A stretch of DNA of 63,958 nt, filler included, from Octopus bimaculoides (taxonomy: Eukaryota): the NCBI RefSeq assembly GCF_001194135.2. It is 3 parts of 3 records of this genome, joined end to end, with 100 filler letters (N's around TTAATTAATTAA, not from the genome) between each part and the next. Parts side by side here need not be neighbours in the genome. Positions count along the whole stretch, not along the records: positions 1 to 30,885 come from NC_068981.1; 2 more parts are not named here. The stretch is one strand, 5' to 3'. The notes beneath the pieces were generated by a model, which did no database searches, was not told the DNA's origin, and saw only the letters and a program-made list of their open reading frames with translations. Positions 1 through 26,609 of the stretch are shown here, piece after piece (the stretch's first letter is position 1; every line of letters begins with the position of its first letter). A program made the translations under genes and the position numbers.

Positions 1-289
1 TATATATATATATATATATATGCGACAAGCTTCTTTCAGTTTCCATCCACCAAGTCCACTCACAAGGCTTTAGTCAGCTGGAGGTTTAAGAAAACACATG
101 CCCATGGTGTCACATGGCTGGGAAGCAAACTTCTTATCACACCGCTATGCCTCCGATTAAGAAGCTTGCTTTGCAATTATATGGTTCCAGGTTCAATCCT
201 ACAGTGCAATAATCTACAACAACTGTGAATTGATCAAAGCCACATGGTGTGTATATGTTTTTGTAAGTGGGCATAAGACGAACGAAACT

Positions 290-597
290 GCTATGCTGAG
301 CGAAAATACGTTGTGCAAATTTAGTTCTGTCCAAGTTATGTCCCTTGATGCCAAAATTACTTGTTTTCTATCTCATATGAGATCGATCGACTATCGCAGG
401 TTACATTCCAAAAGCCCCTGCAATAGGTGAAAATTCACAAAGTAGAAACAGTACTGTAATGTATATTTTGTTTTATTATTTTTATAATTTGTATATATTT
501 ATTTCATTATGAATGCAAAACAACACCATAAAGGAATGGATGTAAGCTTAAATAATAAACCATGATAGATGAACCGCAATACAGCAAGGGATTACTA
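290..597 (+). mobile_element. Possible pogo/Tigger-like DNA transposon 3' end
   Basis: Ends gaaccgcaatacagcaagggattacta-TA, resembling Tigger-type TIRs, with internal ataggtgaaaattc. No partner TIR is seen. Confidence 0.4.
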
Positions 598-2529
598 TAT
601 TACAGTTCTGAAGTCAATAACAATCAACTAAAACCTTTAAAAATGGTGTCCCTATATGACCCCAGTCCAATAACTGAGACCAGCAAAAACAAACAATGCA
701 CTAAAGAATAACAATTAAATATAATCTACTGCAGTAAAGAATTGTGAAGGAAATGGTAAATTATTTCATTCACACTGATATGAATGACATTTGCAAAAGT
801 AGACAGCTCAAGAGGGAATTGAAATAATATATAGAACATCATCATCATCATCATTGCTCTAACGTCTACTTTTCCAAGCTTCCATGGATCAGAACAGAGT
901 TTATTGAGGCAGGTTCTCAAGGGCTGGATGCAGTTCCTCTACCTGTTTGCAAACTCGGTAATATTCCTTCATTGCAGCAGGGAGATGACACAATCGTTAG
1001 CATGCCGGGCGAAATGCTTAGCGGTATTTCGTCTGCCGTTATGTTCTCAGTTCAAATTCCGCCGAGGTCAACTTTGCTTTTCATCCTTTCGGGGTCAATT
1101 AAATAAGTACTAGTTACACACTGGGGTCGATGTAATCAACTTAATCCCTTTCTCTGTCCTTGTTTGTCCCCTCTATATTTAGCTCCCTGTGGACAATAAA
1201 TAAATAAATATTTCTTCATGGCAAGAATGACAACCATTTATAAGAGTCATGCAGTGTCAAGACAAGGAAACAAACTCATGCACACACACACGATGTGCTT
1301 CTTTCAGTTTCCATCAACCAAATCAACTCACAAGGCTTTTACTCAGCCCAAGACTATAGTAGAAGACACTTGCCCAAGAGCCATGAAGTGAAAGCTAACT
1401 CAAAACCATGTAGCTGGGAAGCACACAGCCACTGCACACACTCTTACTTTCTGTCTCACTCTCACACACACCTGATTCTTTTTACAAATCACTAATAGTA
1501 AGGCAGCAAGCTGACAGAGTCATTAGCAAGCTGGGCAAAATGCCTAGCAGCACTTTGTCTTTGTTCTGAGTTCAAATTCCACCAAAGTCAATTTTGCCTT
1601 TCATCCTTTGGGGATGGGGGGGGGGCAATAAAATAAGTACCAGTTGAGCATTGGGGGTCGATGTGATCAACTTACCTCTCCCCCCAAAATTGTTGACCAT
1701 CAACCAAACTTTGAAACTAATGGCGCATAAAATGACACAACCAATTTTTGCCATTTTGATCATTTGAAATGAATACATTAAAATGTTGAGTAATGTGTTT
1801 ATGCTGATGACATAACATTTCAAACATTAAGAGAAACACATACTCTTTTACTTTTACTTGTTTCAGTCATTTGACTGCAGCCATGCTGGAGCACCGCCTT
1901 TAGTCGAGCAAATCGACCCCAGGACTTATTCTTTGGAAGCCTAGTACTTATTCTATCGGTCTCTTTTGCCAAACAATTAAGTTACGGGGACGTAAACACA
2001 CCAGCATCGGTTGTCAAGCGATGTTGGGGGGACAAACACATATATATATATACATATACATATATACGACGGGCTTCTTTCAGTTTCCGTCTACCAAATC
2101 CACTCACAAGGCTTTGGTCAGCCTGAGGCTATAGTAGAAGACACTTGCCCAAGGTGCCACGCANNNNNNNNNNNNNNNNNNNNNNNNNNNNNNNNNNNNN
2201 NNNNNNNNNNNNNNNNNNNNNNNNNNNNNNNNNNNNNNNNNNNNNNNNNNNNNNNNNNNNNNNNNNNNNNNNNNNNNNNNNNNNNNNNNNNNNNNNNNNN
2301 NNNNNNNNNNNNNNNNNNNNNNNNNNNNNNNNNCTCTTTTACTTTTACTTGTTTCAGTCATTTGACTGCAGCCATGCTGGAGCACCGCCTTTAGTCGAGC
2401 AAATCGACCCCAGGACTTATTCTTTGGAAGCCTAGTACTTATTCTATCGGTCTCTTTTGCCAAACAATTAAGTTACGGGGACGTAAACACACCAGCATCG
2501 GTTGTCAAGCGATGTTGGGGGGACAAACA

Positions 2530-2780
2530 CAAACACACGCAGTTTCTTATTTCTTTATTGCCCACAAGGGGCTAAACATAGAGGGGACAAACAAGGACAG
2601 ACAAACGGATTAAGTCGATTACATTGACCCCAGTGCGTAACTGGTGCTTAATTTATCGACTCCGAAAGGATGAATGGCAAAGTCGACCTCAGCGGAATTT
2701 GAACTCGGAACATAATGGCAGATGAAATACAGCTAAGCATTTCACCCGGCGTGCTAACAATTCTGCCAGCTCGCCGCCTT
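2530..2780 (-). mobile_element. SINE, family B (other copies about 975-1210, 48885-49120, 56232-56400 and many fragments)
   Basis: Consensus ggcggcgagctggcagaa...gaaatgcttag...gagttcaaattccgccgaggtcgactttgcc...ggggtcgat...aataaagaaataagaa. Confidence 0.85.
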
Positions 2781-3108
2781 TTGGTAGACAGTTTCTGTCT
2801 ACCAAATTCACACTTCACACACAATCTACCATTCATTGAGAGAGAGAGAGAGAGGGGAACCCCAACCTACCTCTGCTAATTAAGTCACCATGAGAAACAA
2901 AGACAGGATGGTCAAAGCTAGAATGCCTTAGATCAAAGTTCTGTCTGATCAAGGTTAAGATTAAACAACAACCATCTAGTCTAACTAGAGTTTTTGGACA
3001 TTAGCAATATAAACTTTGAACAACAAATGCTGAATCCAACAGACCATCAGTCTCCATTTGGTGTAGTAGTAATAGTAATAATAGGAAACACAACACAGTA
3101 TTGCTTAC

Positions 3109-3206
3109 CACAATGTATCTGTTTCCAAATAATGTAGAATTGACCGGATCAGATCTGTTTTAGAACGTTGCAATGGGTTGTCAATAGCTGTGTTACATAA
3201 CATGGT
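3109..3206 (-). CDS. ATPAF2: ATPAF2 coding exon 4 (98 nt); later exons presumably lie left of the window
   Basis: Acceptor tatattctag|, donor TG|GTAAGC. Encodes TMLCNTAIDNPLQRSKTDLIRSILHYLETDTL(C), matching human TTLCNTSLDNPTQRNKDQLIRAAVKFLDTDTIC. All four exons join in frame. Confidence 0.96.
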
Positions 3207-3471
3207 CTAGAATATAATAAAAGAAGACAAGAGTCAATTGATAGGGATTGTATCAAATATTATATGCAAAGCACCAGACATCACCATACACAATTACTAT
3301 GGAACTATAATCTCCAGCAACTGCTACAAGGAGAACCTTTTACAATGCTGCAATAACTGTATTAAAGATACATATCTATTCAAAACCAAGAAATACTATA
3401 CCCCTGATTAGTTATTAACATCCTTCAATCTCCAACTATAGAATATTACTTTCATATCCTGATGGCAATAA

Positions 3472-3544
3472 CTCATCTTCTAGATCTTATAAGTTCTCAT
3501 CTTCTAGATCTTATAAGTTCTCATCTTCTAGATCTTATAAGTTC
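3472..3544 (+). repeat. Perfect 24-bp x3 tandem repeat
   Basis: (ctcatcttctagatcttataagtt)3. Confidence 0.9.
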
Positions 3545-3622
3545 ATATCTGAACAACAAATGATTTTTCCACTTAAAATACGGAAATATAGAAGTGTTGT
3601 GTGCTCAAAGTGAAAGGAACGT

Positions 3623-3990
3623 GCAGGTGTGGCTGTGTAGTAAGTAGCTTGCTTACCAACCACATGGTTCCGGGTTCAGTCCCACTGTGTGGCACCTTGG
3701 GCAAGTGTCTTCTACTATAGCCTCAGGCTGACCAAAGCCTTGTGAGTGGATTTGGTAGACAGAAACTGAAAGACGCCTGTCGTATATGTGTGTGTGTGTG
3801 TGTCTGTTCCACCCCACTATTGCCTGACAACCAATGTTGGTGTGTTTACATCCTTATAACTTAGAAATTCGGCAAAAATGACCGATAAAATAAGTACTAA
3901 GGCTTACAAAGAATAAGTCCTGGGGTCAGTTTGTTTGACTGAAGGCGATGCTCCAGCATGGCCACAGTCAAAATGACTGAAACAAATAAA
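3623..3990 (+). mobile_element. tRNA-derived SINE, family A (many copies in both orientations, e.g. 1843-2163, 20380-20780, 24560-24870, 53289-53450)
   Basis: A-box-like tggctgtgtagtaag and B-box-like ggttcagtccc, then core ccttgggcaagtgtcttctactatagcc, an internal microsatellite and an AT-rich tail. Confidence 0.85.
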
Positions 3991-5581
3991 AAATAAAAGA
4001 AAAACAAAGACACTAAGGAAGATTTGAGGTGAAGCAGTGATCTTAAAACATATCTCATGAAGGGGACAACAAAAAACTATACTGATTGGCAACACTGCCA
4101 GAGTGGACCCATCCACCCATGTAAGTATAGCAAAACATGTCAAAAGGCTGGGAGACAATATATATATATATCTACTGTCCAGTCTACATGTGATGCCTCC
4201 TCCAACTCTTTGTTATTCATCCACCTCTCTATCACTCATCTTACAATCATATCTCCATCATTCACTCACTGCATATGCTGCTGGTATAACTAAAGATCAG
4301 AGTGAGCCTTTCCTACTCACTGTACTATGCTCCCTGCATACCTAGAGAAGTTACTGAATCTATCCAGCCTTATCATCTCTCTGACAATCACTCTTTTCTT
4401 CCTGTTCCTTCTGTTATGATGCCTATGTAACAAAATAAGGTATTGGAACTATCTTTATTCAATCCCCTCCCAAACACCATCCTTATCATTATCTCTTTCG
4501 TCAATGCCAAGGTTAATGTATAAAAAACTGCATCAAACCTGCTTGTACCCTAAACACCCTACCATCACCCTATCAATATGTCCAGTCATTGTTTCCTCTC
4601 CCTCTTTGACCACTTGCTATTGCTATCTATTATTCACTCTTACTGATATCCATTTCTACCTCCATTACTATCCTGCATCCTCTCTCTCTCTCCTCCTCCT
4701 CTACTTTCTCACTCCATTCAATTTGTTTCTACCCTCACACTGTTGCTCATCAGTCTTTTCCTCCCATTGCTCTCTTCTCAGTTATGTTGCTTTGAGTGAA
4801 TGAACACCTCACAGAGCAGTAAGGACTCTTTAGTTTTATGAAATATACGGCAACCTTATTATTGTTGGTGTACAGCAAAATGCACTCACTACACTCTTTA
4901 ATATGGTTGTCAAACAAGTACCATAGGTTGAAAGAATGCTTTAGCCTTGTCAAGAAGATGACAACCTCTCTAGTGCTGGTGCCATGATAAAATGCATTCA
5001 GTTAACTCTGTATAATGGTTAGAAATAGGAAGGGCATCCAGCCATAGAACCCAGACCAAAACAGAGTGTACATACAAGATGTGGTCCTCCAATTCCTCTA
5101 GAATGGGCAGCAACTCTGGATAAGAACCAACTTCATCCATGCCATCACAGAAAATGAACATGTATTGATGATGTTTATGGTAATGGTAGAGTTGGTTATG
5201 ATAATTATGATGATGGTGGTGATGAAATGCTAATGAAGATGATAATGATGATACGGTCTCTGACCCATTGCTGTATCATAACCTCGATTTCCTTCTATTA
5301 CTATTACAACAGATTTTACTTTTTGTTTTGTTTTTGTTCAGAACTTGCTACCTACCACTCCTAACTTCTACTCCAAAGTTACTTATTGCTTCCAACCATC
5401 CCATTTTCATCTCATGTACAGTACTTCACTCCCTAATACATAAAAGCCAACAAAATTTTCATGTAGCCTTTTATTCTAACAATCACCATTCCATAGTATT
5501 CCATTCCACCTGTTTCCATAAAATGCTTAACTCCAATTCTTTAAACTTCATATTCACCACACTACTCTCATTCTTTCCTGT

Positions 5582-7741
5582 CAATATTCGAGACAGCACC
5601 CTGGTAGATAAAGCAATTAAGGATATGAAGCCAGGAAAAGCTCCCGGCCCATCAGGAATCACTGCTGAGATGCTTAAAACATCTGGTGGTGTGGGCTATG
5701 GCCAAGTCATCCGTATTGTAAACCAGGTAGTTCATACACAATGACTGGCATAGCAGCACCATAGTCAACTGCTACAAGGGTAAAGGTGATGCTTTAGATA
5801 GAAATAACTACAGGGGTATCAAACTGCTGGATCAGGTGAAGGTCACGGAGAGGGTCATAGCCCAACTAACTAGGGAGAGAGTCTGCTTAGATGAGATGCA
5901 GTTCGGTTGATGCTATATTCCTTGTACAGCAACTGCAGGAGAAATACCTAGCCAAAAATGAACTCCTATATTTGGCTTTTGTGGACTTGGAGAAAGCCTT
6001 TGACAGGGTCCTCGATCTCTTATCTGGTGGGCGATGGAGAAACTGGGGATTGACGAATGGTTAATAAGGGCTGTTCAGGCCCTATACAGAGATGCCGTCA
6101 GTAGGGTTAGGATTGGAAATGAGTATAGTGAAGAATTCCGGGTAGTAGTAGGGGTCCACCAAGGATCAGCCCTCAACCCCCTCTTATTCATAATAGCCCT
6201 CCAGGCAATAACAGAGGAATTCAAGACAGGTTGCCCCTGGGAACTCCTCTATTCTGATGACCTGGCCCTCATAGCAGAATCACTACCAGAACTAGAGAAG
6301 AAACTTCAAGTTTGGAAGCAAGGTTTAGAATCGAAGGGCCTTAGAGTCAATGTTGCAAAGACCAAAGTTCTAGTAAGTAGGAAGGCGAACACATCACACA
6401 CCCCTTCAGGTAGGTGGCCCTGCTCGATCTGTAGAAAAGGTATAGGTAGAAACTCCATAAGATGTACCCAGTGTAAGCTATGGACACATAAGAGGTGCAG
6501 CAACATCAAAGGAAGATTAACTGGGAAGATAGCTTTCACGTGCAGCAGATGCACAGAGGCAATAAACACCACAGATGCTCAGAAAACAGACTCCATCACA
6601 TGCCAGGGGAAGAAACTAGAAGTAGTTGATAGCTTCCACTACCTAGGTGACCAAGCCTGTAGTGGGGGTGGATGCTCAGAGAGTATTAGAATAAGAATCG
6701 CCTGGCAAAGTTCAGAAAGCTTCTACCTCTACTGGTGACAAAGGGCCTCTCGCTCAGAGTGAAAGGTAGATTGTATGATGCATGTGTGCGAACTGCCATG
6801 CTTCACAGCAGTGAAACATGGGCCATGACTGCAGAAGACATGCACAGGCTCGAAAGAAATGAAGTTAGCATGATCCACTGGATGTGCAATGTCAGTGTGC
6901 ACACACGACAGAGTGTAAGCGCCCTCAGAGAAATGTTAGACATAAGAGGCATCACTGGTGGGGAGTGGCCTTAACATTTCTGCAGTGGAGGATGGGTCTT
7001 CTTGAGTACAGCAAACCACCAGGTATCTTGGTTTGCAAAAGAGACGTTTGCGTTGGTATGGTCATGTACTGTGGATGGACAATGAGAGCAGTATGAAGAA
7101 GTGCCACTCCCAAACATTGGAAGGAATCCAGGGCAGAGGAAGATCCAAGAAGACATGGGATGAGATGGTGAAGCATGACCTTCAAATGTTGGGCCTCACA
7201 GAGGCAATGACAAAAGACCAAGACCTCTGGAGGTATGCTGTGACTGAGAAGACCAGGCAAATAAAGTGAGTCCACTGCTGTAACCTACACCAGTGTGGCA
7301 TAACCAACGCACTCAAAAGTACCTTGGATCGTAGGGTGACATGCTGTGCTTGAGGAGACCTATTGAGTCAAGTACATCAACATCAGCAATATCAAAATCA
7401 AATCAAATGGAAATTGCAGTTGTGAGCCCCGTGTCGGTAGCACGTAAAAAGCACCATCTGAATGTGGCCGATGCCAGTGCCGCTATGACTGACTTCCGTG
7501 CCAGTGGCACGTAAAAAGTACCATCCAACCATGGTCAATGCCAGCTCACCTGGCCCCTGTGCCAGTGGCACATAAAAAGCACCCACTACACTCTCGGAGT
7601 GGTTGGCATTAGGAAAGGCATCCAGCTGTAGAAACACTGCCAGATCAGATTGGGGCCTGATGCAGCCTCCTGGCTTCCCAGACCCCAGTCGAACCATCCA
7701 ACCCAAGCCAGCATGGAAAACGGACGTTAAACGATGATGAT
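5582..7741 (+). mobile_element. 5'-truncated, decayed RTE-clade LINE (RT domain, PHD-like finger, C-terminal domain, 3'UTR, (GAT)n tail) antisense in ATPAF2 intron 3
   Basis: Translations include KPGKAPGPSGITAEMLK, YRGIKLL, FVDLEKAFDRV, GVHQGSALNPLLF, LLYSDDL (YADD variant) and KGRLYDACVRTAMLH. Frameshifts are present. The 3' end is aacggacgttaaacgatgatga. Confidence 0.92.
6957..7031 (+). repeat. 75-bp arm of an inverted repeat (partner 8238-8312)
   Basis: ggtggggagtggccttaac...caccaggtatcttgg matches the reverse complement of 8238-8312 with 2 mismatches. Confidence 0.9.
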
Positions 7742-7824
7742 GGACAAAACCTACTTTACATAAACACAAAAGATTCCATGAAAAATATTAAAGCACACAG
7801 AAGAATATACTGAAGTTGACATAC

Positions 7825-7970
7825 CAAATTCATTTTGTTTTGTTTGATTGCATTCTTTTGACCATTCCATTCAGTAGCAACAGCTAAGGCCAAGCTTTCA
7901 TTAGGAACAATGAAGACGTTACCAAGAGGTGTCCGAAGTTTACGCTTGTCGAGGTTGATTTCAAACTGAC
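7825..7970 (-). CDS. ATPAF2: ATPAF2 coding exon 3 (146 nt)
   Basis: Acceptor ttcttgtctttcag|, donor TG|GTATGT. Encodes GQFEINLDKRKLRTPLGNVFIVPNESLALAVATEWNGQKNAIKQNKMNL, matching human GFEINLDHRKLKTPQAKLFTVPSEALAIAVATEWDSQ. Confidence 0.96.
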
Positions 7971-8237
7971 CTGAAAGACAAGAAAAAAAATAATGAAGAT
8001 TTGGGAAAATCTCATCAAATACCTAAATAATAATAATTATAATTTCTAATATGGGTGCAGTGCCAGAAAGTTTGGGGAAACAGAATTAATTAAATGGACT
8101 TGGATTTTAACAGCTACTTTAATTTATCAACCTAGGAACGATAAAAGGTAACAATGACATTGGCAGGATTTGAACTCAGATTGTGAACAGTTGTAACAAA
8201 TACAGGAAGAATATCTATATTGTCAACACCAAAAAAC

Positions 8238-8312
8238 CCAAGATACCTGGTGCTTTACTGTACTCAAGAAGACCCATCCTCCACTGCAGAAATGTTAAGG
8301 CCACTCCCCACC
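8238..8312 (-). repeat. 75-bp arm of an inverted repeat (partner 6957-7031)
   Basis: Manual alignment gives 73/75 identity to 6957-7031 in inverted orientation. Confidence 0.9.
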
Positions 8313-9573
8313 CCGGTGAAGAGGACTGGCCTTCAAGAGACCTGTGCCGGTGACACATAAAAAGCACTCATGACAGTGCCACATAAAAGCACTCATGCTG
8401 GTGCCACTTTAAAAGCATCCAGTACACTCTATAAAGTGGTTGGCATTAAAAGGGTATCCAGCTGTTGAAACGAAGCCAAATCAGACTGGAACCTGGTACC
8501 ACTTGCCAGCTCTGGTCAAACCATCCAACCCATACCAGCATGGAAAACAGACGTTAAAGGATGATGATGATGATCATGATGATGATGACAATGATGATGA
8601 TACACTTACATAATTGCTCCTACCCCCACTGACTGACATGAACAAATCAGAGTTCAGCAGCCAACAAAAATAACAAAAACAGCAATTCACATTACATATA
8701 CACTGCACAACAAACTGATGAAGCAATAACACCAGAGACACCATCATCATCATCATCATCATCATCATCATTTAACATTCGTTTTCCATGCTAGCATGGA
8801 CTAGATGGTCAGACAGGAGCTGGCAAGGCCTGAAGCTGCACCAGGTTTCATAGTCTGTTTTAGCTCGGTTCCTATGGTTGGATGCCTACCACTTTACAGA
8901 GTGCACTGGGTGCTTTTTATGCTGCACCAGTACCAGTGATTTTTACATGACACCAGCAGCAGTGCCCTACATGGGTAAGCATTACCACAATGATTTTAGG
9001 ATATTCGTTCTGTTTTTCTCTATTGTAGCTGACAGGTCATCTTGAGTACAACAATGCACCACATACCATGCCATATACTTTGTCACCTTCTTCATAAGAC
9101 TCAGTGTCTTGAGACTGGCCTTCAATACTTAGACAAAAATTGTTGATGCCTTTCAGTTAAATGCAAAGAACAATAAGTAACAACATAATGCCAGCATGGC
9201 TGTGTGATTAGAAAGATTGCTCTGCAACCACATGCATGGCTTTGGGTTACATCCCATTGCATGGCACTTTGGGTAAATGTATTGTATTATAGCTTCAGGT
9301 TAACTAATGCCTTGTGAGCAAAATTTGATAGACATAGAGAAGCACATATATGTAGAGAAATTTGGCTGCTATTTCTAGCAGGCTGAGTAACTATATAGAT
9401 ACACCCTCAGATATTCGATAGAAATACCAGATAATCTGAGAATATTAACTGTGATGCACTCTATCCAGGAGAAAACTTATCTCACAGCCACTTAATGCTA
9501 TGAAAGTAGTGAAGCATTGACCCTTAAGAAGCATTTTTTGACACAGATTTTACAGCAACAGATATGCTATAAC

Positions 9574-9844
9574 CAGTGGTGGACTGGCTAGGTAGCCAGC
9601 TTGCCCGATGGCAAGTGGGCCCCTGTGCCATTAGAATCCATATATGGGGGAGCCTATCCCCTCAAGTCTGAGAATTTTTTATTCACTCCTGGAAGAATGC
9701 ATTAATTATTTCAGCCTGGCTGTGTTTGTAGACAGTTGAAAAGAATACTTTTAACAAAAAAAAAATTTAATGATAGTATTGTAGTTGCAGGTGGGCCCCC
9801 TTAGTCTCCTGGCAACCAATATTTTTAGACCCAGTCCACCACTG
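9574..9844. mobile_element. hAT-superfamily MITE (271 bp) in ATPAF2 intron 2
   Basis: Perfect 14-bp TIRs cagtggtggactgg / ccagtccaccactg, flanked by an 8-bp TSD gctataac (9566-9573 and 9845-9852). Confidence 0.9.
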
Positions 9845-10059
9845 GCTATAACAGTACCTAGTTTTGTGCTCTAAGTTAATGCTATGGGCGGTGGAATCAA
9901 ACTTGTAATATACTGAAACAACTTTAAATATAACTTCAAATCAACAATATTCTAAATCAACTTTAACAATCTTCTAACAACACAGCCTTATACCTAAGTA
10001 AAAATCATTATTAACTGAACTATAAGAAGGGAAAAATAGATTAGAGGTAAAAAACTCAC

Positions 10060-10104
10060 CATTATTTTGAGAAATTGTTGCAGTCTTGTAAAATTTTTTC
10101 AATT
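10060..10104 (-). CDS. ATPAF2: ATPAF2 coding exon 2 (45 nt)
   Basis: Acceptor ctctttacag|, donor G|GTGAGT. Encodes (E)LKKFYKTATISQNN(G), matching ATP12-family ERKRFYQNVSITQGEG. Confidence 0.93.
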
Positions 10105-11060
10105 CTGTAAAGAGATAGATAAAAAAGGGAAAGCACTTAAAATTACTGATAAAGAACTCAATTTGAGATTGGGTTAAGAACAATAATTTACATAGAATAA
10201 TTTTAAAACCTATACACCCAGTTTAAAATCACCTGATTTTAAAAGGAATCCATTTTAGTGCAAGGATTTAGTCCAGGTCTATGGACTGAGAATGACCCAC
10301 TCCAAAAATAACTTCTTCCTTTTCCCTCACTAATTTCAGGGTCCCTGAAAAGGCACATAGACCCTACTTATCCTCCACTGACTAAACTAAACAAAATTTT
10401 TTTTTTAAATTACTTGATGGCCGCTTCACATTGAGAAGTTTGAGCCAGTTGATTAGTTTTCTTTTCATCAGCAACATCATTTAATGTTTATTTTCCAAGC
10501 TGACATGGGGTGGATGGTTTGACAGGAGCTGGCAAAACAGGAGTTGCACCAGGTTCTATAGGCAGTTTTGACCTGGTTTCTACAGCTGGATTTCCTAACA
10601 CCAACCACTTTACAAAGTGTACTGGATGTTTTTTTTATGTGACACCAGCACTACTGATTTTTATTTGGCACCATCACCACTGCTTTATACATGGCACTAT
10701 CACCAGTGCTTTTTACATAGCACCTGCACCTGTGCTTTGCACATGGTACCATCATCAGTGCTTTTTGTGTGGCACCATCAACAATGCTTTCTTAACTGTT
10801 AGGGAACGAAATGGGGAGGGAAAAGGTTGACAGGGTAGAGGACAGTGAATTGGCCAGATGAACAGGGCATCAGACAAAATGTTTTGCAGTGTTGGTTACA
10901 TTTCTACATGTTCTGAATTTAAATCCTGACTAGTTCAAAATTACTCTTCATTTTTCTGGAGCCAATAAGATAAGCACAATTCAAGTTGTGGGAGCTAGGT
11001 AGACCATGTACTAGGGTACTGTTAACAACATTAAGACTGCCACCAAGTTCAATGAGGAAT

Positions 11061-11274
11061 TTAACTCTTCAGCATTCAAATTATTCTGTCAAAAGTAATG
11101 CTTATTTATTCACATTGTTTTGAATTAATCAGATATTATTTTGTAGTTTTGAGATTTGATGAGGTAACTGTTAATTTTTTAGAATGATATTGTAGGGTTG
11201 ATGTGACCAGTATGAACATAAAATAGGTTGAATATTTTGTCCACATATGGCTGGTTTAAATGATGAAGGATTAA
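11061..11274. mobile_element. Older TTAA MITE copy in ATPAF2 intron 1
   Basis: TTAA-ctcttcag...tgaagga-TTAA. Body is similar to 16459-16676 and 26073-26301. Confidence 0.65.
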
Positions 11275-11589
11275 TGTATAAATAGATGGTCACTAAGATT
11301 CTGCCTTCAATAAATGATATTGAAGACAGTTTTATAAGATGATATAACACAAAGTTTTGGGATTTATTGTTCTTGGAAACTTCTATATGCAGTAACTTGG
11401 TTTTCAACTATTATAAAAACTGATCCAGTGCAGAAAGAGACATGTCAGTCAGTCCTGTCAGATAACTTGTGTGAGTGGTAATAGTTTGTATTAGGAAGAG
11501 CACCCACTATTAAAAAACACATCAAAAACTCAAGTCAAATCAATTTAAAACCCTAATTGCACATACAGGACTAATACCATGATAGCACT

Positions 11590-11900
11590 ACATGGCTCAG
11601 TGGTTAGAGCATTGAGCTTGCAATCATGTGGTTGTGAGTTCAATTCCCAGGCTGGGCTTGTGTTGTGTTCTTGAGTAAGCCACGTTATTTCACATTGCTC
11701 CAGTTCACTCAGCTATAGAAATGAGTTGCAACATCACTGGTGCCAAGCTGTATTGGCCTTTGCTTTACCCTTGGACAACATTAGCGGCGTGGAGATGGAA
11801 GACTAGCATGCATGGCCAACTGTTGGTCTTCCACAAACAAGCTTGCCCAGACTTGTACCTCAGAGGGGAACTTTCTAGGTACAATACCATGGTCATTTGT
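11590..11900 (+). mobile_element. tRNA-derived SINE, family C
   Basis: Head tggctcagtggttagagcattg...gagttcaattccc and core ttgtgttcttgagtaagccac. Homologous to 22846-23150. Confidence 0.75.
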
Positions 11901-13353
11901 GACCAAAGGGGGTCTTTACCCTTTACTGCACAAAGTAGTATAGTGGCCAAGTAGGAATATTAGACCATGTGTGAACACCCTTCAAATCACCATGTCAACT
12001 TTCTTTCTTTCAGATACAGAACCAAACGACCAAAACACCATCAGAAACTCCTCTCTCCCTGACAGACTACACCATCAATGTATGTATATAACAAATGGTA
12101 GGTTTGGAGAGATTGTGGAGATGTCATTGACTGAAGACAGTCCTGGCAACCATCTATTGATGTGTTAAATTCCTCACGAAACTTTTTGGCAATCCCAACT
12201 TTGTTAATAGCACCATAGTGCATAGTTTGTGTAGTTCCCATAACCCTGACATTTAACTGGCCCTTATTTTATTGACTCTAGAAGAATGAAGGGTAAATTT
12301 GAACTAGGCAGGATTTGAACTCAGAACAAATAAAAATGTAACTGCACACTTCAAATCTCTTTCCAATCTTTCCAGCTTTACCTTTAATTTCCCAATGAGT
12401 GAGCAACAAGCTCACTCATTGATTCCAGACTGATACTTTTTGGAAGATCGTAAAGGTTGCTATGTTCGTGTCTATTTCATTACCTGAGTATGTATATCAA
12501 TGTGTTCATTCACATATTAAAGTCACTTGTACTGGTTTTCTTAAGAGACATAAGATTATATACAATTGTAGCTATAGCAATGAAGTGAAAATGTTGAAAG
12601 AGATAATCGAAAATAGAGTTTGCATCTATTACGTTTTAATTTATTTTTAACTAGTCATAGAGAACCTATATTGTAATGGAATAGTAAAGAGGAGTTGTGA
12701 TATTTTTACTTTTGCCGGTCAAGAACATTGGTTTCAAATGGGAAAAACACGTTTTCGCAGTTCTACAGCAAATGAAAGACATGAAGGATGTCCTTCACCA
12801 GAGTTGTTACGATGAAACTAAATCTGGGGGCTGTTTTAGCGATCCCTGATTAAATCCTTAAAAATAAAACACAACTCCAAAAGCTGTCTCTCTTCTAACT
12901 AGTCTAACACTGAAACAACGAAATCATAATAGTTGTTTAGCATAAGGTTAATAGTGAGCAACAGGCCTATGATAAACAGCATTTCAGTTGTTACCATCCC
13001 GACTTCCTAGGAATATCTAAAACTATTTTATCTAATGTGTCATGCTTTTCCTTTTTTCTAAGACAATAAGGGGTGTGATTTGAGGGATATTTGGTAAGAT
13101 CTTTAACAGGACAGGCAACCACATAGAGGTTCCCTAATATAATTGTAGGTTTGTGTTTTGCTAAAACAAGCAGCGTTACACATGTATAAACATTAGGTTT
13201 TCTAACTATATAAATAGATCATCAAACACGACTGTTACAAGCCGACTGAGGGGTCAAGGACACAGCAATGACGAAGATATAATAAACTTTTAAACCGTGT
13301 CTAACGACAAACACAAAATTTGATCGAGGACAATATACAAATATTCGAAACCC

Positions 13354-13392
<39 letters not shown>

Positions 13393-13694
13393 GATAGTTA
13401 AGAGTGCAAGTACTTTAGATAACAAGGCAAGGCTCGCTTAACAGGTTACTAGGTTTCGATTCCAGATTAAGGATATTTCAGTTCCCATGCACTATTTCCT
13501 GGAAAGGGCTTGAATGTCATGATTTCCCTATTTCCTTCTTACTTTGAATGTATCCCCATAAAACCAAAAGTCAAGAAAGCAATATTTACAAGTTTTTAGA
13601 GAACCAAAGACGATCAACGTAAAAGTGTATTAAAATTTCTTTTTAAGAGAACGATAACAGCGCAGAAATAATTTTAGTACAGGAGTCACTATAC

Positions 13695-13806
13695 CTTTCG
13701 AGTGTAATTTCCTAGTAAATACAGTGTTTATGGCATTAGAGAGAGGAAATTTCTTGAGAAAGGGATGAAACCGTTGCAAAACACCGTTAGCGGCAGCAGA
13801 AGCCAT
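13695..13806 (-). CDS. ATPAF2: ATP synthase mitochondrial F1 assembly factor 2, coding exon 1 (probable mitochondrial transit peptide)
   Basis: Minus strand ATG at 13806 gives MASAAANGVLQRFHPFLKKFPLSNAINTVFTRKLHSK+G (112 nt), then donor AG|GTATAG. The peptide is basic, hydroxylated and acid-free like a presequence, and splices in phase 1 into the 10104 exon. Confidence 0.88.
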
Positions 13807-13997
13807 GTTGAAAAAAAGAATAAGCAAGTTGGTTTGTAAAGTATCATTTAATTGGTTAATCAGGCCGGAAGTAGGCGTAGTAACCAATTGATGTTGGCGT
13901 TACATAGCAGGCGTAAAAATCTTCTAAGTGGAAGACGTTCATTCTTCCGTGTTTATGGTGTAAGTAAACAAACCTAGCAAAGTGCTTCTAAAAAAAA
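13807..13997. promoter_or_regulatory. Bidirectional promoter and 5'UTRs shared by ATPAF2 and GID4
   Basis: 191 bp between divergent ATGs. ETS/GABP consensus CCGGAAGT at 13865-13872, CCAAT on the minus strand (ATTGG 13851-13855) and on the plus strand (13884-13888). Locally CpG-rich against CpG-poor flanks. Confidence 0.75.
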
Positions 13998-14141
13998 ATG
14001 CCGCAAAATATCATAGACCCTCCACCGCCCGAAAACCATCATCTTGCTGGAATGCCCACAAATCTTTTATACAACGGCTCTCGATTCAACGGACATCAAA
14101 AAAGCAAAGGCAATTCATACGATGTTGAAGTGGTTTTACAG
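13998..14141 (+). CDS. GID4: GID complex subunit 4 (VID24 homolog, Pro/N-recognin of the GID/CTLH E3 ligase), coding exon 1
   Basis: ATG at 13998 gives [48 protein letters not shown] (48 codons), then donor AG|[23 protein letters not shown] is identical to human GID4 as I recall it. I could not find exon 2 in the window. Confidence 0.95.
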
Positions 14142-14397
14142 GTGAGAACGATAAGTTACTGACTAAATCTATCTTATTCTGCCGAACAATCTGGTTTGTT
14201 TTAGCATAAACCTTTTGCCTGTTTCCTCCTATATCATAGCAATCGCATTATTACAGCATCTGCAGTTTACGTTCACCACTGCATCATTTGCTCTCCGATG
14301 TAATTTGAAATGATAAATTCTATGTAAATGTCAGCTGTCTCTAACATCATCGTTTTTCTTTCTCTCTTTCTCTCTCCGCACACACATACATACACAC

Positions 14398-14436
<39 letters not shown>

Positions 14437-16458
14437 CATACTTTTGTGTTTTTGAATTTGTTCTCGATTATTCTTGTTTTCAATGTTTTTGGTCATCTTA
14501 TTGAATTAGAAATATGTACTGTGTGTGTGTATGTATATATATATATATATACACACGCAGACACATATATATANNNNNNNNNNNNNNNNNNNNNNNNNNN
14601 NNNNNNNNNNNNNNNNNNNNNNNNNNNNNNNNNNNNNNNNNNNNNNNNNNNNNNNNNNNNNNNNNNNNNTATATATATATATATATATATATATATGCAT
14701 GTATATGTGTGTACGTAGTCACAGTCTGAGTAATGTGAATTTGAAAATACAGGATCAGTAATCGCGAAATGTCTGTTTCCTTTCCTTGTTGCTTTTATGA
14801 ATAAATTTGCTTTGGATTGTTATCAACACTGTCTCAGATGATGTTCACGAGTTGTAATGATAATTATCCTAAGTGTGTCCTGTGATACGATCGTCCTTCA
14901 TGTCACAGTATCTCATATCAATGTGATGTCTGTCCATTGAAAAAAGGCATTAATAGACATCAGCATGTGTATCTCTCTCTCTCTATATATATATATATAT
15001 TTAAACATTCTCATATATATATATATTAGAATGTTTAAAGCTGTCATTTGCTCAATGTTTTTTAAAACACCGTTGATGGATTGGTTCTGTTTAATAAATG
15101 CACAACTGTACCAGTTATGTAGCTGGAGGTGAAGACTGTAGATTAGAAAATGTTAATCTCACGGAAAACCGTTTTCAAAACTTGGCTTCGACTCCCTTCT
15201 ATAGGAGCTGTATCACTTCACGATTTTATTATTATTAGTTTAAATAATGCGACTATGCCTCATGGAAAGATTCATGTTTATCACATTTACATGAGATAAA
15301 TTAGTTTTATCATGTGTATGGAAATCTAGAACATACCTCGTATTTATAAATCTTTCGTTCGTCTTTTACCTGTAGCACTCTACCTGCTGATAGTTGCTTG
15401 TTTAGCCTATCAAATTTCTAGACTAGAACTTTGTAATAAGCAGATATTTTTCTCTCTTCTGAGAGAGTTTTTGTTTGTTTGTTTTTTAACCTTTTTTAAA
15501 AAATGATTTCGCGGGTAATTAAGTGTGAGCCGGTTTCGTTTATAACTTGCACTTTGAACAAAGTGGGGGTAGGAGTCACGACGCGATCGCTCGACTTGCT
15601 AGAAATTGCAACCAAATTTTCCTGAAAATCACACCGTACTATTCTAAATAGAATTGACACATTGGAATGTGTGATCCAGGGTTAACACTTGAAAAAATAA
15701 TTATTATTATGGGATTGTTACCGCTTAAAGACTTATCAACAAAGGTCACCTGATTTGGGCCTGACCTGAATCAGGACAATAATTCTTACATAAACTGAGT
15801 TGGTCTCTCTCTCTCTCTCTCTCTCTCCCTCTTTCTCTCTCCCTCTCTCTCTCTCTCTCAGCAACATACTGGGTGTACTTTTCTTGAATATTAAAATTTA
15901 CTTCATCGATCCGATCAGAGTATATTACTTTTTACATTCACAAAATGTTTACACATAATTTTTTGAAACACTTATTAAAAATATAAATTAGAGTAGAATA
16001 CTTCCGGCAAGAGAGAAAATTTTCTCACTGTTTGGTAGATTATTTATTAAGTTTTCCTCGTGTGTGTGTGTGTGTTCATTTAAGCCTTCCATGCTTGCAT
16101 AGATTAGAGCGGGTTTTGTGGAGGCAGATTTCTTCAGCTGAGTGCCCTTCCTGTCATTAACACTCACCTGTTTCCAAGCAAGGTAATATTTTCTCATAGC
16201 TAGACATGTTTTTTTTTGTTTTGTTTTTTCATGGAAGACTGACAACAAACAACCTCGCTTGTATGACGATGATGCTCATTTACAACCATCACGCAATGCC
16301 TAAACAAGGGTACACATAAACACACACATACACGTACGCACAAGTGTGTGCATACATACGTACAGTGGGCTTCTTTCAGTTTCCCTCTACTAAATCCACT
16401 CACGTGGCTTTGGTTGACTTGGAGCTATAGCAGAAGACAAGGTGCCACGCAGTGAGAT

Positions 16459-16676
16459 TTAACCCTTTAGCATTCAGATTACTGTGTCACCTGTAATATT
16501 TATTCACATTGCTTTGAATTAATCTTGCATTATCTTCAAGATTCCAATGATGTGATTATTTAGTTTTAGAATGACATTGTAGATTGAGGTGTGAGAGACC
16601 AGATTCAGTCAGTTTGGACATAAAACAGATAGAATATTTGGGCCAGATTTGGCTGGTTTAAATACTAAAGAGTTAA
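16459..16676. mobile_element. piggyBac-like TTAA MITE (second family) nested in a SINE
   Basis: TTAA-ccctttag...ctaaagag-TTAA, with SINE sequence on both sides. Confidence 0.75.
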
Positions 16677-19600
16677 CCTCTCTTAGATGGTAAACAACTT
16701 CTTAACCACACAGCCTCATCTCCTTCAGTTTGTGTGTCATCAGCATCATTATCATCATATAACGTCCGTTGTCCATGTTGGCATGGGTTGGATGGCTTGA
16801 CCAGAGCTAGCAAGCTGGAGATCCGCACCCTATTTCCATAATAACATGTTTCAGTAGAATATACCAAAAGGAACTACCAAAATTTTTGAGTAGAATTTTA
16901 GTAGGATATTCATTCTCAAGTAAATAAAAAAAGACTTACTGAAAGTGCAATACAGGAGGATTGAACTTGAAAGCACACAGCTACAAAGCAAACTTCTTAA
17001 CAACGCAACCAAAAGTTTCCTATCAGACCACTCCATTTAAAACATTCTTATCCCAGTAGTATAGTCGTGAGGGTGGCACTTTTCGGTTTGCTGTATAAGC
17101 CGTATTGCTCCCAGAATCAGGAGGAAAACGCATGGGCTGCTCTGGGTGGCACACATTCTAACTACTCTGCTATCTCTTCCTTCTGTGCATTGATCACTTT
17201 TCTATCATACAGATAACACCATCCTCACTTTTCTTTAATCTCCTACATTACACTTAAACACTTCAGTGTTTGCACTGCTTTCATGGAAATACTTCAGTAG
17301 GAACAACACAACCAGTTCTCCTTTGACAGTACTTAGACATTTACTACACAAACAAGGAGACAATCTTGCAACACTGCACTCACTCTATTCATGAACAACA
17401 CTTAGCTACAACTAGAAGACTAGCCTTCTTCTTCAAAACAAGAAAAATTATTGTCCTGAAAAGTAGCTAACTTTCTGCAAAGCTCAAATTAAACCCACAA
17501 TGTTGTATTGTTCATATATCTGTGGTGGTGTTGCTATTACAAACATAAACATCCTAGACAACATAGTAATTTATCTAATTGACAGATTCACTTATCACCA
17601 GCATACCACAATCATTTGCTCACAGACCATTGTTTTATCTTCCTGCCTGTTCTACTGCTATTATAATGCCTTATACCAGTGGTTCCCAAACTTTTTCATG
17701 CTGCCACCCCCTTGGCACCCAGACCACATACCTAACGCCCTCCACCAACTCACCACCACAAATATAGACCATTTTCTGCAACAAATTCAAAACAACTGTA
17801 TTCCACAAATAAAACCTAACCTAATTAACCCATTGTTTTTACATTTGTTGCCTCCACTTCAGCACCCTACTGAATCTTTTCACTTCCGCAAGGGGCCACT
17901 ACCACACCACTGCCTTATACTCTACAGAATTAGCTATCTACTTATACCCTACTCCTGCTCCCTCAACACACCTATTTCTCCTCTTCTTATGTCCCTATAG
18001 CCCCTCACTCTCAGACTGCACACTAAATACAGTCATTCCTCTCCAAAATCTCAACCCTGTAGAATTGCCTCTCGGGCAATGTTTTACTACACAAATGTCA
18101 CTTTGCTGATGTTTCAACCAAATACTCTCTGAGTGAAAGAACTTAGCTATGAATGTATGCTAGATGCTGCATTTCCACTTCAAAAGAACTAATATAAAAA
18201 CACTAAAGAATAATTCACTCTGTAAAATAGTCAACTCTGTAAAGTTGTTGGTGTTAGGAAGGGCACCCAACCATAGAAACCATGCCAAAGTAAACAGTGG
18301 ATCTTAGTGCAGTCCTTTAGTTTATCAGCTCCTTATCCATCCAACCCATGCCAGCATGGAAGACGGATGTTAAATGATGATGATGACAAATAATTATCTT
18401 CACCATCAACGTTGCCTTTCATCCTTTTGGGGGTCGATAAATTAAGTACCAGATGCATACTTGGGTTGATCTAATCAACTGACACCCTCCCCCAAAAAAA
18501 TTCAGGCTTTGTGCCTAGAGTAGAAAAGAATTATCATTACCGTTTAATATCCATGTTCCATGCTGGTATGAGTTGAACCATTTGACAGGATCAGATGAGG
18601 GTCCAAGGACTACCTCATACTCTAGTGTCAGTATTGGCATGATTTCTACACCTGGATACCCTTCCTAATGCCAATCACTTTACAGTGTGTATTGGATGCG
18701 TTTGTGTGTGTGTGTGTGTGTCACTGGCACTAATGAGGTCACCATGCAGCTCACAAATCTGCAAAACCCAAAGAAGAAGGAGGAATGTCTTTATGCTAGA
18801 TGGGAGTTAAGATGTGAGAGAAGGAAGTGGAATAGAGGAGCTACATGGAGAAGAAAGTGTTGTAGCGGCGCTACATGGCTGCTCACATTTAGGGGAGAAG
18901 TGAGAATGAATCAGTAGTAGCTGCAAAGAGGTAAATAGTAGTGTAGTGTTGAGATGTCTAGGTGCTACCTCAAGGGATGATGTGAGTGGTGACAGAGAAG
19001 CTAAGAGTGCAAATGTGTAGGGCTTACAAGAGTAAATGATGGGAGTAAGAGATAGGAAAAATGGGAGAGGAAAAGTAGGCAACATCTGTAAAGATTGGGT
19101 TGGGCTGAAGAGTGGCTGGACAGAAAGATAGATATGGGGAAGGGAGATGGCCAGTGATGCAGGAGTTGGAGAAGATACAGGAATGCAAACAACAGGATAG
19201 TAATGATGGTACAGTTGGCAGGAGATGGAGACGAAATGACATGTTTAGGTTGGCTACAGGAGAGAGGGAGAAAAACAGAGAGGCATAGTGCATAAGGAGA
19301 GATAATTTGGTGGTCCAGTGGTGGGAGAGGGGATGATACAAAGTTGTGTTAGGTGCTATGTTAATATAATGAACTTGTATACAGTATTCAGGTGCTCGAC
19401 AACTCATCAGAAAAAGTAACCAAAATTGTATGGGAAATGAACTGTGAATGAGTCTTTAAAAAAAAAAACACGGGGCAAGGAGCATCAGATGTTGGTGAAT
19501 TTCAGGAAGCAGGAAAGTTTTGAAGAATGTAGTGTCTCAACAGCTAACAACTGATGCAGGTAGTTTATTCCATACTTCAGTAATTCTGAGTTCAAAATTT

Positions 19601-20898
19601 GCCATGGTCAACTTTACCTTTCATCCTTTCAGGGTTGATAAATTAAATACCAAACAAGTACTGGTGTCGATGAAATCAACTAACCCCCTCCCCCAAAATT
19701 TCAGGCCTTGTGCCTATGGTAGAAATGAATATTAGATATGGCCATAAAGCTTGGCAGATCTATAGTCTTATCCCTCATGCTAGGTGCAAATAAATAGTAG
19801 ATAGAATAATGCTTGTTGTGGTGTGTAAGTTCAGTACAGTTTAGAAATCTATTGTGCATCAAAGATAGGCTCATGTAAGAGAAACAATTAAAATGGTATG
19901 GACACCCATCCTAGCATGGAAATGGACATTAAATGATAAGAGGAGAAATATTTGAGGAAACAGCAATGTGAATTAATAATGAAAAGTAACCAGAGTGAGA
20001 GTAGATCAAAGCAGATTTTTAATGACACATAAACCCACATATGTCTATTGTATAGGATTTTGAGAAAATGCTCAATAACTCAACTTACTATTATGTTTTT
20101 TATCATAGCTTTATATTAACAAACAACAGCAGTCTTTTGTGAAGCACATTCCTAAAATAGTTTCTCAACTAATTCTGTTTTATCAATACTTGTTATGTAG
20201 CCAATGTAGAATAATATTTTACTTATAAACTTTGTTAATAGGATCCTTTATATAATAGCAGTGCGTTGGGTGAATGAGTTAGTCAGACAAAATACCTTGT
20301 GGTGTTTAATTACATACCTCTACATGAAGGTTGAGTTTTACCTTTCATTCTTTGTGAAATAATAAAGTACCAGTAAAATACCATCTTTTATCTTTTACTT
20401 CTTTTGGTCATTAGACTGTGGCCATGCTGGGGCACCACCTTGAAGAATTTTTAGTTGGATGAATTGCTCTCAGTACTTTTTTTTTTTTGTCAGCCTGGTA
20501 TTTATTCTATTGCTCTCTTTTGTTGAACTGCTAAGTTACAGGGACATAAACACACCAACACCAGTTGTCAGGTTGTGGTGGGAGGCAAACACAGACACAA
20601 AGACACTCATAGATATATATTTATATAACAGACTTCTTTCAGTTTCCATTTTCCAGATCCACTCACAAGGTTTTAGTCAGCCCAAGGCTATAGCAGAAGA
20701 CACTTGCCCAAGGTACCATGCAGTAGTACTAAACCCAGAACCTTGTGGTTAGGAAGCAAGCTTCTTACCACACAGCCATGCCTGCTCAGGATAATCAACC
20801 GTTTTCCTTCTATCAAAAATGTGTCACCTTTTGCCTAAATGAGAAAACAGTATTATTGTTCTCAATGAGTATAGTTCTGAAGAGATTCCTTACCACCT

Positions 20899-21129
20899 TT
20901 AACCCATTTGATACCAACCTGGCTGAAACCGCATCTGGCTCTGTAGTACAAATGTCTTGTCTTCATAAGTTCTGAATTAAAATTTTCCACCAAACCATAG
21001 TCACAATTTATGTTCCTAACACTAGCTTAATGATAACTAAGTTATTTTTACTAAATACTTTGTTGCATTTAAAATTAATTAAAAGAAACACAGAGCATCT
21101 CAAAATAAATACGGTAACAAAAGGGTTCA
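20899..21129. mobile_element. TTAA MITE (third family); related copy at 24004-24236
   Basis: TTAA-cccatttg...caaaaggg-ttca. Body gaaactgcc...ggtt(c/t)tgt...aattattttactaaa is shared with 24004-24236. Confidence 0.65.
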
Positions 21130-22294: not shown

Positions 22295-22592
22295 TTAACC
22301 CATTACCTCCCATAATTCTATTAACTGGAATTTTTTTATGAAACTTTGATTTCTAGCATAAAACAGCCTTAGAAACACGCTGGAATGATCAAAATAACAT
22401 TTCAAAATAACATTTTAAATAGAAATAAGCGAGACATTGGGTGAAAAATTAGCAAACCTCATTTGAATATCAGAGAAATATACCTGGTAGATATAGCAAA
22501 AAGGTTAGATATGTGTAAATATTGACAGATAATTACGAAATTTGTAATTTTTAAGTGATCTCATATGAGATCACTGGTGCGTAATGGGTTAA
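22295..22592. mobile_element. piggyBac-like TTAA MITE, copy 1
   Basis: TTAA-cccattacc...gtaatggg-TTAA. Nearly identical to 27499-27798. Confidence 0.85.
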
Positions 22593-22655
22593 AGTTTACA
22601 TTTAAAGGTTATAGCTGTGATGTTATATTATCTATCAAAGAACTTTCACTTGATA

Positions 22656-25992: not shown

Positions 25993-26072
25993 TGATACGA
26001 TTAACTGAACAGCCTGCTTGTGAAATTAATGTGCGAGTGGCGGATCACTGCACTCTTCAGACATGCACATCC

Positions 26073-26570: not shown

Positions 26571-26609
<39 letters not shown>

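What the first reader, a model, noticed from the sequence alone, without database searches (positions are those of the whole stretch)
3109..14141. ATPAF2 and GID4 are head-to-head with 191 bp between ATGs, apparently the same pair as in humans
Seen: four spliceable ATPAF2 exons on the minus strand and GID4 exon 1 on the plus strand, divergent, with no assembly gap between them. Established (recalled): human ATPAF2 and GID4/C17orf39 are divergent immediate neighbours at 17p11.2 (Smith-Magenis region). Inference: the pair dates to the bilaterian ancestor and is held together by a shared promoter. That would couple mitochondrial F1 assembly (ATP12) to the GID/CTLH Pro/N-degron receptor, whose yeast ortholog Vid24/Gid4 degrades gluconeogenic enzymes: a possible conserved metabolic co-regulation module. 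It is notable in a lineage whose genome is otherwise heavily rearranged. I cannot say whether published microsynteny catalogues already list it.
Basis: partly seen in the sequence, partly recalled or inferred. Interest (0 to 1): 0.78.

Follow-up and report, generated by a model that had tools for sequence, protein, structure and literature searches.

The report
Octopus ATPAF2–GID4 head-to-head gene pair
In this octopus sequence two unrelated housekeeping genes (ATPAF2 and GID4) start back-to-back 191 bases apart, as in humans, an acorn worm, a tubeworm and other molluscs; this is a real but ordinary example of an ancient gene pair stuck together around one compact two-way promoter.

Summary
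Four GT-AG-bounded ATPAF2 (ATP12, PF07542) exons lie on the minus strand. GID4 exon 1 lies on the plus strand and is 100% identical to the N-terminus of Octopus vulgaris GID4. The two ATGs are 191 bp apart, with no gap in between.

The same divergent adjacency occurs elsewhere:
- cuttlefish: 219 bp between ATGs
- annelid tubeworm: 243 bp
- hemichordate: 285 bp
- sacoglossan gastropod: 4 kb
- human: 199 bp between TSSs, taken from the literature

It is absent within 10 kb in a wasp, an octocoral and a sea anemone. A bilaterian-age origin is therefore well supported.

The spacer sits in the only stretch of the 30.9-kb piece that is not CpG-depleted (o/e about 1 versus a median of 0.26). It carries two CCAAT boxes and ETS sites. 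This fits a constitutive bidirectional promoter, but transcription was not tested.

The pair is already catalogued as a conserved vertebrate head-to-head pair (Li 2006; Dávila López 2010; a 2025 list of human divergently paired genes). Hundreds of such ancient pairs are known. The proposed metabolic co-regulation module has no support: GO similarity is low, human eQTLs point in opposite directions, and the pair is lost in some lineages. Interest is low to moderate.

The parts
13695..13806 (-). ATPAF2 exon 1 (ATG at 13806-13804; 37 codons + 1 nt; donor GTATAG)
   Evidence: Sequence read and splice check. The N-terminus and the context around the ATG align with cuttlefish ATPAF2.
10060..10104 (-). 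ATPAF2 exon 2 (ELKKFYKTATISQNN; acceptor TTACAG, donor GTGAGT)
   Evidence: Matches the KKFYKN motif of ATPAF2 homologues.
7825..7970 (-). ATPAF2 exon 3 (GQFEINLDKRKL...ATEW...MNL; acceptor TTTCAG, donor GTATGT)
   Evidence: tblastn gives 57-75% identity to ATPAF2 proteins. Splice sites.
3109..3206 (-). ATPAF2 exon 4 (TMLCNTAIDNP...LETDTL; acceptor TTCTAG, donor GTAAGC). Later exons lie outside the piece.
   Evidence: The same 32-aa exon is found as a discrete block in cuttlefish, gastropod, annelid and hemichordate loci.
13807..13997 (.). 191-bp spacer between the two start codons; putative bidirectional core promoter
   Evidence: Islands of conservation with the cuttlefish spacer.
13851..13888 (.). 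CCAAT-box pair (ATTGG 13851-13855, CCAAT 13884-13888) flanking an ETS/GABP-type site, CCGGAAGT 13865-13872
   Evidence: Two CCAAT boxes 28-37 bp apart occur in all four short spacers examined. CCGGAAG lies between them in both cephalopods.
13944..13949 (-). Second ETS core (CGGAAG on the minus strand)
13964..13973 (+). GTAAACAAAC, a forkhead-like 10-mer about 25 nt upstream of the GID4 ATG, identical in octopus and cuttlefish
   Evidence: Alignment; coordinates.
13998..14141 (+). GID4 exon 1 (48 codons, [13 protein letters not shown]...YDVEVVLQ; donor GTGAGA)
13200..15800 (.). The only stretch of the piece that is not CpG-depleted (CpG o/e 0.9-1.1 versus a median of 0.26); approximate limits. 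The top-scoring 500-bp window (13601-14100) spans both start codons; the stretch itself runs mostly into GID4 intron 1.
   Evidence: The same contrast is seen at the cuttlefish, tubeworm and acorn-worm promoter blocks.

Best explanation
This is the octopus copy of an ancient head-to-head pair of two housekeeping genes. ATPAF2 is the ATP12-family assembly factor for mitochondrial F1-ATPase. GID4 is the substrate receptor of the GID/CTLH ubiquitin ligase. Shown: the adjacency and orientation are shared by cephalopods, a gastropod, an annelid, a hemichordate and vertebrates, so they were inherited from at least the protostome-deuterostome ancestor. Inferred: the roughly 200-bp spacer, which lies in a germline-unmethylated (CpG-undepleted) island and has CCAAT and ETS sites but no TATA box, is one compact bidirectional promoter. 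The core elements of both genes interdigitate within it. Any rearrangement breakpoint or insertion there would damage at least one essential gene, and the target is tiny. The pair therefore survives even in the heavily rearranged cephalopod genome. Retention needs no functional link between the two proteins.
For: Gene identities. Same divergent adjacency: cuttlefish L001 with a 219-bp ATG-ATG gap, Lamellibrachia L007 with 243 bp, Saccoglossus L005 with 285 bp, and Plakobranchus L003 with 4004 bp and no gene called between. ATPAF2 exons in those loci were confirmed by tblastn. Human: TSSs 199 bp apart (PMC12672016). Vertebrates: listed as a human-chicken-Fugu head-to-head pair (PMC1487180) and as a potential bidirectional promoter in 8 vertebrates with 131 nt intergenic distance in human (PMC2871058 Table S5). 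Promoter signature: the highest CpG o/e window of the whole piece is 13601-14100 (1.10 versus a median of 0.26), and the same contrast holds in three other phyla. CCAAT pair plus ETS sites. General precedent: conserved ancient pairs are enriched for 5'-5' orientation and spacers under 1 kb (PMC3514665).
Against: No transcript, CAGE or methylation data were available, so divergent transcription from this interval and sharing of elements are inferred. In an unbiased k-mer test the CCAAT result is only suggestive: the expected number of 5-mers present at least twice in all four spacers by chance is 0.18. The gastropod spacer is 4 kb, so tight spacing is not obligatory. The pair is not adjacent in a wasp or in two cnidarians. 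The Solemya locus is unclear. Only one species per non-molluscan phylum was sampled.
Confidence: 0.75

Rival explanations
1. One reading: the pair is kept together by selection for co-regulation, because coupling F1-ATPase assembly to the GID4 Pro/N-degron pathway forms a conserved metabolic module.
For: Deep conservation of orientation and short spacing in four phyla. Conserved 5'-5' pairs as a class show raised co-expression (PMC3514665). One SNP is a cis-eQTL for both genes in human blood.
Against: GO-based functional similarity of the pair is low (GS2 0.23). The human eQTL alleles move the two genes in opposite directions. Adjacency is absent in a wasp and in two cnidarians that have GID4. 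The pair is not listed for fly, mosquito, nematode, Daphnia, Ciona or Trichoplax in a 64-species survey. From memory, yeast VID24 and ATP12 are on different chromosomes. From the abstract of PMC5572396, bidirectional neighbours are often co-expressed but rarely functionally related.
Confidence: 0.1
2. Purely neutral persistence: the genes have independent promoters and remain neighbours only because a 200-bp spacer is almost never hit by a breakpoint.
For: The spacer is about 1e-7 of a Gb-scale genome, so random breakage between the genes is improbable. The gastropod keeps the adjacency with a 4-kb spacer, which suggests that spacing is not strictly constrained.
Against: The spacer has stayed at 191-285 bp in four phyla, although the introns on both sides filled with repeats. 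Cephalopod spacers keep aligned motif islands. One CpG-undepleted island covers both starts. This rival overlaps with the best explanation and differs only on whether elements are shared.
Confidence: 0.12
3. Convergence or artefact: the adjacency arose independently in cephalopods and vertebrates, or is an assembly mis-join.
For: None found. The piece does contain gaps and a gap-flanking duplicate.
Against: There is no gap between the genes. An independent cuttlefish assembly shows the same junction with alignable spacer sequence. Four further lineages share the orientation. Independent origin of the same pair in the same orientation five times is very improbable.
Confidence: 0.02

Closest known systems
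Human GID4(C17orf39)-ATPAF2 divergently paired genes at 17p11.2
   Same: Orthologous genes, 5'-5' orientation and about the same spacing: 199 bp between TSSs in human versus 191 bp between ATGs in octopus. The pair is catalogued as conserved in human, chicken and Fugu and in 8 vertebrates.
   Different: The octopus promoter block is AT-rich (GC 0.36-0.39). It stands out by lack of CpG depletion, not by GC content. Octopus introns are long and full of repeats. Published catalogues that I could read list the pair for vertebrates only.
Conserved ancient microsyntenic pairs (CAMPs) of the co-regulated 5'-5' class (Irimia et al. 2012, PMC3514665)
   Same: A non-paralogous gene pair kept adjacent across distant metazoan phyla, divergently oriented, with conserved orientation and a very short spacer.
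   Different: I could not check whether this pair is in their list, because the supplement is not held. Co-expression, one of their criteria, was not testable here.
HSPD1-HSPE1 bidirectional pair
   Same: Mitochondrial-function gene in a head-to-head pair with a spacer under 1 kb, conserved far beyond vertebrates.
   Different: HSP60 and HSP10 are partners in one machine, and the pair reaches fungi and unicellular holozoans. ATPAF2 and GID4 have no known functional link, and the pair was absent in the two cnidarians sampled.

Membership tests
ATPAF2 / ATP12 family (PF07542) | Significant match to the ATP12 domain above Pfam's gathering score | tested here: met
   108 bits versus a cut-off of 27, E 4e-31, residues 40-134.
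ATPAF2 / ATP12 family (PF07542) | Best homologues are annotated ATPAF2 orthologues, with shared exon boundaries | tested here: met
   All 13 hits carry PF07542. The best is cuttlefish ATPeAF2 at 60% identity. The same discrete exons are seen in L001, L003, L005 and L007.
ATPAF2 / ATP12 family (PF07542) | Complete open reading frame with the C-terminal half of the protein | not testable with these tools
   No exon downstream of 3109 is present in 1-3108. The gene runs off the piece.
GID4 / Vid24 family (PF09783) | Match to the Vac_ImportDeg domain | tested here: inconclusive
   The 48-aa exon alone scores 16.4 bits, below the cut-off of 27. It covers only profile positions 2-26.
GID4 / Vid24 family (PF09783) | Identity with a full-length GID4 orthologue | tested here: met
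   48 of 48 residues are identical to the N-terminus of Octopus vulgaris GID4 P0196, which scores 209 bits on PF09783. The MP...PPPP...[26 protein letters not shown] start is conserved across phyla.
Bidirectional (divergently paired) genes | 5'-5' orientation with less than 1 kb between starts | tested here: met
   191 bp between ATGs. The TSSs themselves are unknown.
Bidirectional (divergently paired) genes | Divergent transcription initiating within the spacer, and co-expression | not testable with these tools
   No expression or CAGE data. The only indirect support is a CpG-undepleted island peaking at 13601-14100.
Bidirectional (divergently paired) genes | Promoter motif signature (CCAAT/NF-Y, ETS/GABP, no TATA) | tested here: inconclusive
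   Two CCAAT boxes, two ETS cores and no TATA in the octopus spacer. The CCAAT pair recurs in all four short spacers, but the unbiased k-mer control gives a chance expectation of 0.18.
Conserved ancient microsyntenic pair (bilaterian) | Adjacency with the same orientation in several distant phyla on both sides of the protostome-deuterostome split | tested here: met
   Mollusca, Annelida, Hemichordata, Vertebrata (literature).
Conserved ancient microsyntenic pair (bilaterian) | Presence in non-bilaterian outgroups, which would indicate an older origin | tested here: not met
   No ATP12 gene or exon within 10 kb of GID4 in Dendronephthya or Actinostola.

The most novel reading that the evidence does not exclude
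The ATPAF2-GID4 bidirectional unit, with a paired-CCAAT (NF-Y-type) plus ETS architecture, has been kept since the bilaterian ancestor. On this reading, joint or reciprocal transcriptional control of ATP-synthase assembly and of GID/CTLH substrate selection is itself selected, making it a hard-wired metabolic switch.
Probability: 0.07. Interest if true: 0.55.

Novelty: new member of a known kind. Interest (0 to 1): 0.25.

Why it matters
It adds one verified case to the known class of ancient head-to-head gene pairs. It extends a pair catalogued only for vertebrates to molluscs, annelids and hemichordates, with 190-290 bp spacing kept in four phyla. It also shows that such pairs survive the cephalopod genome reshuffle. 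The spacers are short, alignable and from several phyla, so they could serve as a small test bed for how bidirectional promoters are built outside vertebrates. It does not by itself reveal new biology linking ATP synthase assembly and the GID ligase.

Tried and rejected
- **Failed synteny look-ups.** Look-ups of GID4 from oyster, shark, Manduca and Paramuricea found no record, probably because they were shorter isoforms. This cost four of the twelve look-ups.
- **Solemya velum unresolved.** No GID4 exon lies within 10 kb upstream of the partial ATPAF2 model. The locus has triplicated exon-4 copies and an inverted ATPAF2 fragment. The two genes sit on the same 137-Mb contig with locus tags 464 apart. 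I left this as inconclusive.
- **Metagenome scan uninformative.** A scan with a GID4 profile gave 80 loci, mostly intron-less transcripts or short contigs. None carried an ATPAF2 match, so it says nothing about synteny.
- **Supplements.** The Irimia 2012 supplementary lists are not held. The supplements of Schmidbaur 2022 on cephalopod microsynteny do not mention either gene.
- **RNA scans.** The Rfam and tRNA scans of the piece were empty.
- **CCAAT significance.** The targeted test looked strong, with a joint probability of about 4e-5. It weakened to suggestive in the unbiased k-mer control.
- **Further exons.** I looked for more exons of both genes in the piece and found none.
- **Bacterial promoter scan.** Not used, because it does not apply to an animal genome.
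Full report
**Observation**

The piece is AT-rich animal DNA (GC 0.38) with two N runs, at 2164-2333 and 14574-14669.

Four exons on the minus strand splice cleanly with AG/GT boundaries into a 401-nt open frame:
- 13806-13695
- 10104-10060
- 7970-7825
- 3206-3109

These were read and verified by splicing.

The 134-aa product matches Pfam ATP12 (PF07542) at 108 bits against a cut-off of 27. All 13 of its database hits are ATP12-domain proteins. The best is cuttlefish ATPeAF2 at 60% identity.

On the plus strand an ATG at 13998 opens 48 codons that end at a GTGAGA donor after 14141. Alone this exon is too short for Pfam (16.4 bits). It is, however, identical at 48 of 48 residues to the start of Octopus vulgaris GID4, which scores 209 bits on PF09783. 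The window is therefore from an Octopus species.

The two ATGs are separated by 13807-13997, which is 191 bp, and no gap lies between them.

Neither gene has further exons in the piece. ATPAF2 runs off the left end, and GID4 intron 1 exceeds 16.7 kb.

**Is it the same pair elsewhere?**

I fetched genomic context for orthologues. The called gene coordinates start at the CDS ATG, which I checked.

| Species (group) | Locus | Arrangement | Gap between ATGs |
|---|---|---|---|
| Octopus (cephalopod) | window | head-to-head | 191 bp |
| Acanthosepion pharaonis (cuttlefish) | L001 | head-to-head; GID4 exon 1 98% identical | 219 bp |
| Lamellibrachia satsuma (annelid) | L007 | 282-aa ATP12 gene and GID4, head-to-head | 243 bp |
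| Saccoglossus kowalevskii (hemichordate) | L005 | 278-aa ATP12 gene and GID4, head-to-head | 285 bp |
| Plakobranchus ocellatus (sacoglossan gastropod) | L003 | divergent neighbours, no gene called between | 4004 bp |

tblastn confirmed ATPAF2 exons in each of these loci.

For vertebrates the literature is explicit:
- Li et al. 2006 name C17orf39/ATPAF2 among 42 human head-to-head pairs linked in human, chicken and Fugu.
- Dávila López et al. 2010, Table S5 entry 90, list it as a potential bidirectional promoter. The human intergenic distance is 131 nt, and the pair is found in eight vertebrates.
- A 2025 catalogue gives human TSSs at chr17:18,039,408 (+) and 18,039,209 (-), 199 bp apart.

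The pair is not adjacent in three sampled species. None of the three loci contains an ATPAF2 match within 10 kb.
- Wasp Cotesia congregata: Nup188 is the divergent neighbour.
- Octocoral Dendronephthya gigantea.
- Sea anemone Actinostola.

In the 64-species survey the row for this pair does not list Ciona, flies, mosquitoes, C. elegans, Daphnia or Trichoplax. Those species do appear in other rows of the same table.

On parsimony, the arrangement dates to at least the protostome-deuterostome ancestor. It was lost in some lineages, and it was either absent or lost in cnidarians. Independent origin of the same pair in the same orientation in five lineages is not credible.

**What the interval looks like**

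The piece as a whole is strongly CpG-depleted, with a median o/e of 0.26 in 500-bp windows. The one exception is a block of about 2.5 kb at roughly 13200-15800, where o/e is 0.9-1.1. The top-scoring window, 13601-14100, spans both start codons, although the block itself extends mostly into GID4 intron 1.

The same contrast between the promoter block and the whole locus holds elsewhere:
- cuttlefish: 1.01 versus 0.33
- tubeworm: 1.23 versus 0.59
- acorn worm: 0.94 versus 0.72

In methylated genomes this is the footprint of a region kept unmethylated in the germline, as constitutively active promoters are. This interpretation rests on general knowledge.

The octopus spacer has no TATA box. It carries these motifs:
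- ATTGG at 13851-13855
- CCGGAAGT at 13865-13872
- CCAAT at 13884-13888
- a reverse CGGAAG at 13944-13949

The octopus and cuttlefish spacers align in islands at exactly these motifs. They also align at a GTAAACAAAC 10-mer about 25 nt before the GID4 ATG.

Each of the four short spacers has exactly two CCAAT boxes, 28-37 bp apart. The joint empirical probability is about 4e-5. That test was post hoc. In an unbiased control, CCAAT/ATTGG is the only 5-mer present at least twice in all four spacers, but the expected number of such 5-mers by chance is 0.18. I treat the NF-Y-type signature as suggestive only.

**Mechanism**

Shown: ancestry of the adjacency.

Inferred:
- The spacer is one compact bidirectional housekeeping promoter.
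- Breakpoints or insertions there would damage an essential gene.
- A 200-bp target is almost never hit.
- The pair therefore persists even where cephalopod genomes were reshuffled.

This matches the co-regulated 5'-5' class of conserved ancient microsyntenic pairs.

**The metabolic-module idea**

This idea lacks support:
- The GO similarity of the pair is low (0.23).
- In human blood, alleles that lower GID4 raise ATPAF2.
- Several lineages have separated the genes.

**Novelty**

The pair is already catalogued for vertebrates, and the phenomenon is well known. I did not find the extension to molluscs, annelids and hemichordates stated in any text I could search. The most relevant supplementary list, from Irimia 2012, was not available.

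I rate this a new member of a known kind, of low to moderate interest.

Noticed in passing
window 5268-7269 (+): Degenerate non-LTR retrotransposon fragment in ATPAF2 intron 3, antisense to the gene. The ORF at 6034-6738 hits RVT_1 (E 1.5e-11) followed by a PHD-type zinc finger. Neighbouring ORFs are frameshifted pieces.
   Followed up: partly
window 1843-2040 and 2334-2531: A 198-nt direct repeat, 100% identical, sits immediately on both sides of the N run at 2164-2333. It looks like a gap-flanking assembly duplicate, not biology.
   Followed up: no
window, e.g. 3623-3808, 20600-20785, 24689-24864; 7550-7718, 25804-25989, 29287-29455, 30577-30762: Several families of 100-230-nt dispersed SINE-like repeats fill the introns of both genes in both orientations, at up to 97% identity (25804-25989 versus 30577-30762). 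None intrudes into the 191-bp spacer.
   Followed up: partly
window 13955-13973: ATGGTGTAA, a two-codon upstream ORF, lies directly before a GTAAACAAAC forkhead-like motif about 25 nt upstream of the GID4 ATG. The 10-mer is identical in cuttlefish, but the mini-uORF is not.
   Followed up: partly
L006 14681-17979 and L008 5287-9213: In both cnidarians sampled (octocoral and sea anemone), GID4 lies within a few kb of a gene with GTP_EFTU and GTP_EFTU_D2 domains. This may be a cnidarian microsynteny in place of the ATPAF2 linkage.
   Followed up: no
L002 (Solemya velum) 9608-9766, 40976-41071, 41457-41546, 43739-43831: The bivalve ATPAF2 locus carries three copies of the exon-4-like segment and an inverted ATPAF2 fragment upstream of the gene model. 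GID4 is on the same 137-Mb contig but has a locus tag 464 away. This could be a rearranged locus or a mis-assembly.
   Followed up: partly
window 14141-30885 versus L001 664-9638: GID4 intron 1 is longer than 16.7 kb in octopus and about 8.8 kb in cuttlefish. The CpG-undepleted island extends about 1.7 kb into this intron, to about 15800.
   Followed up: partly
window 15792-15901 and 26562-26777: Long (TC)n/(AC)n compound microsatellites in GID4 intron 1.
   Followed up: no
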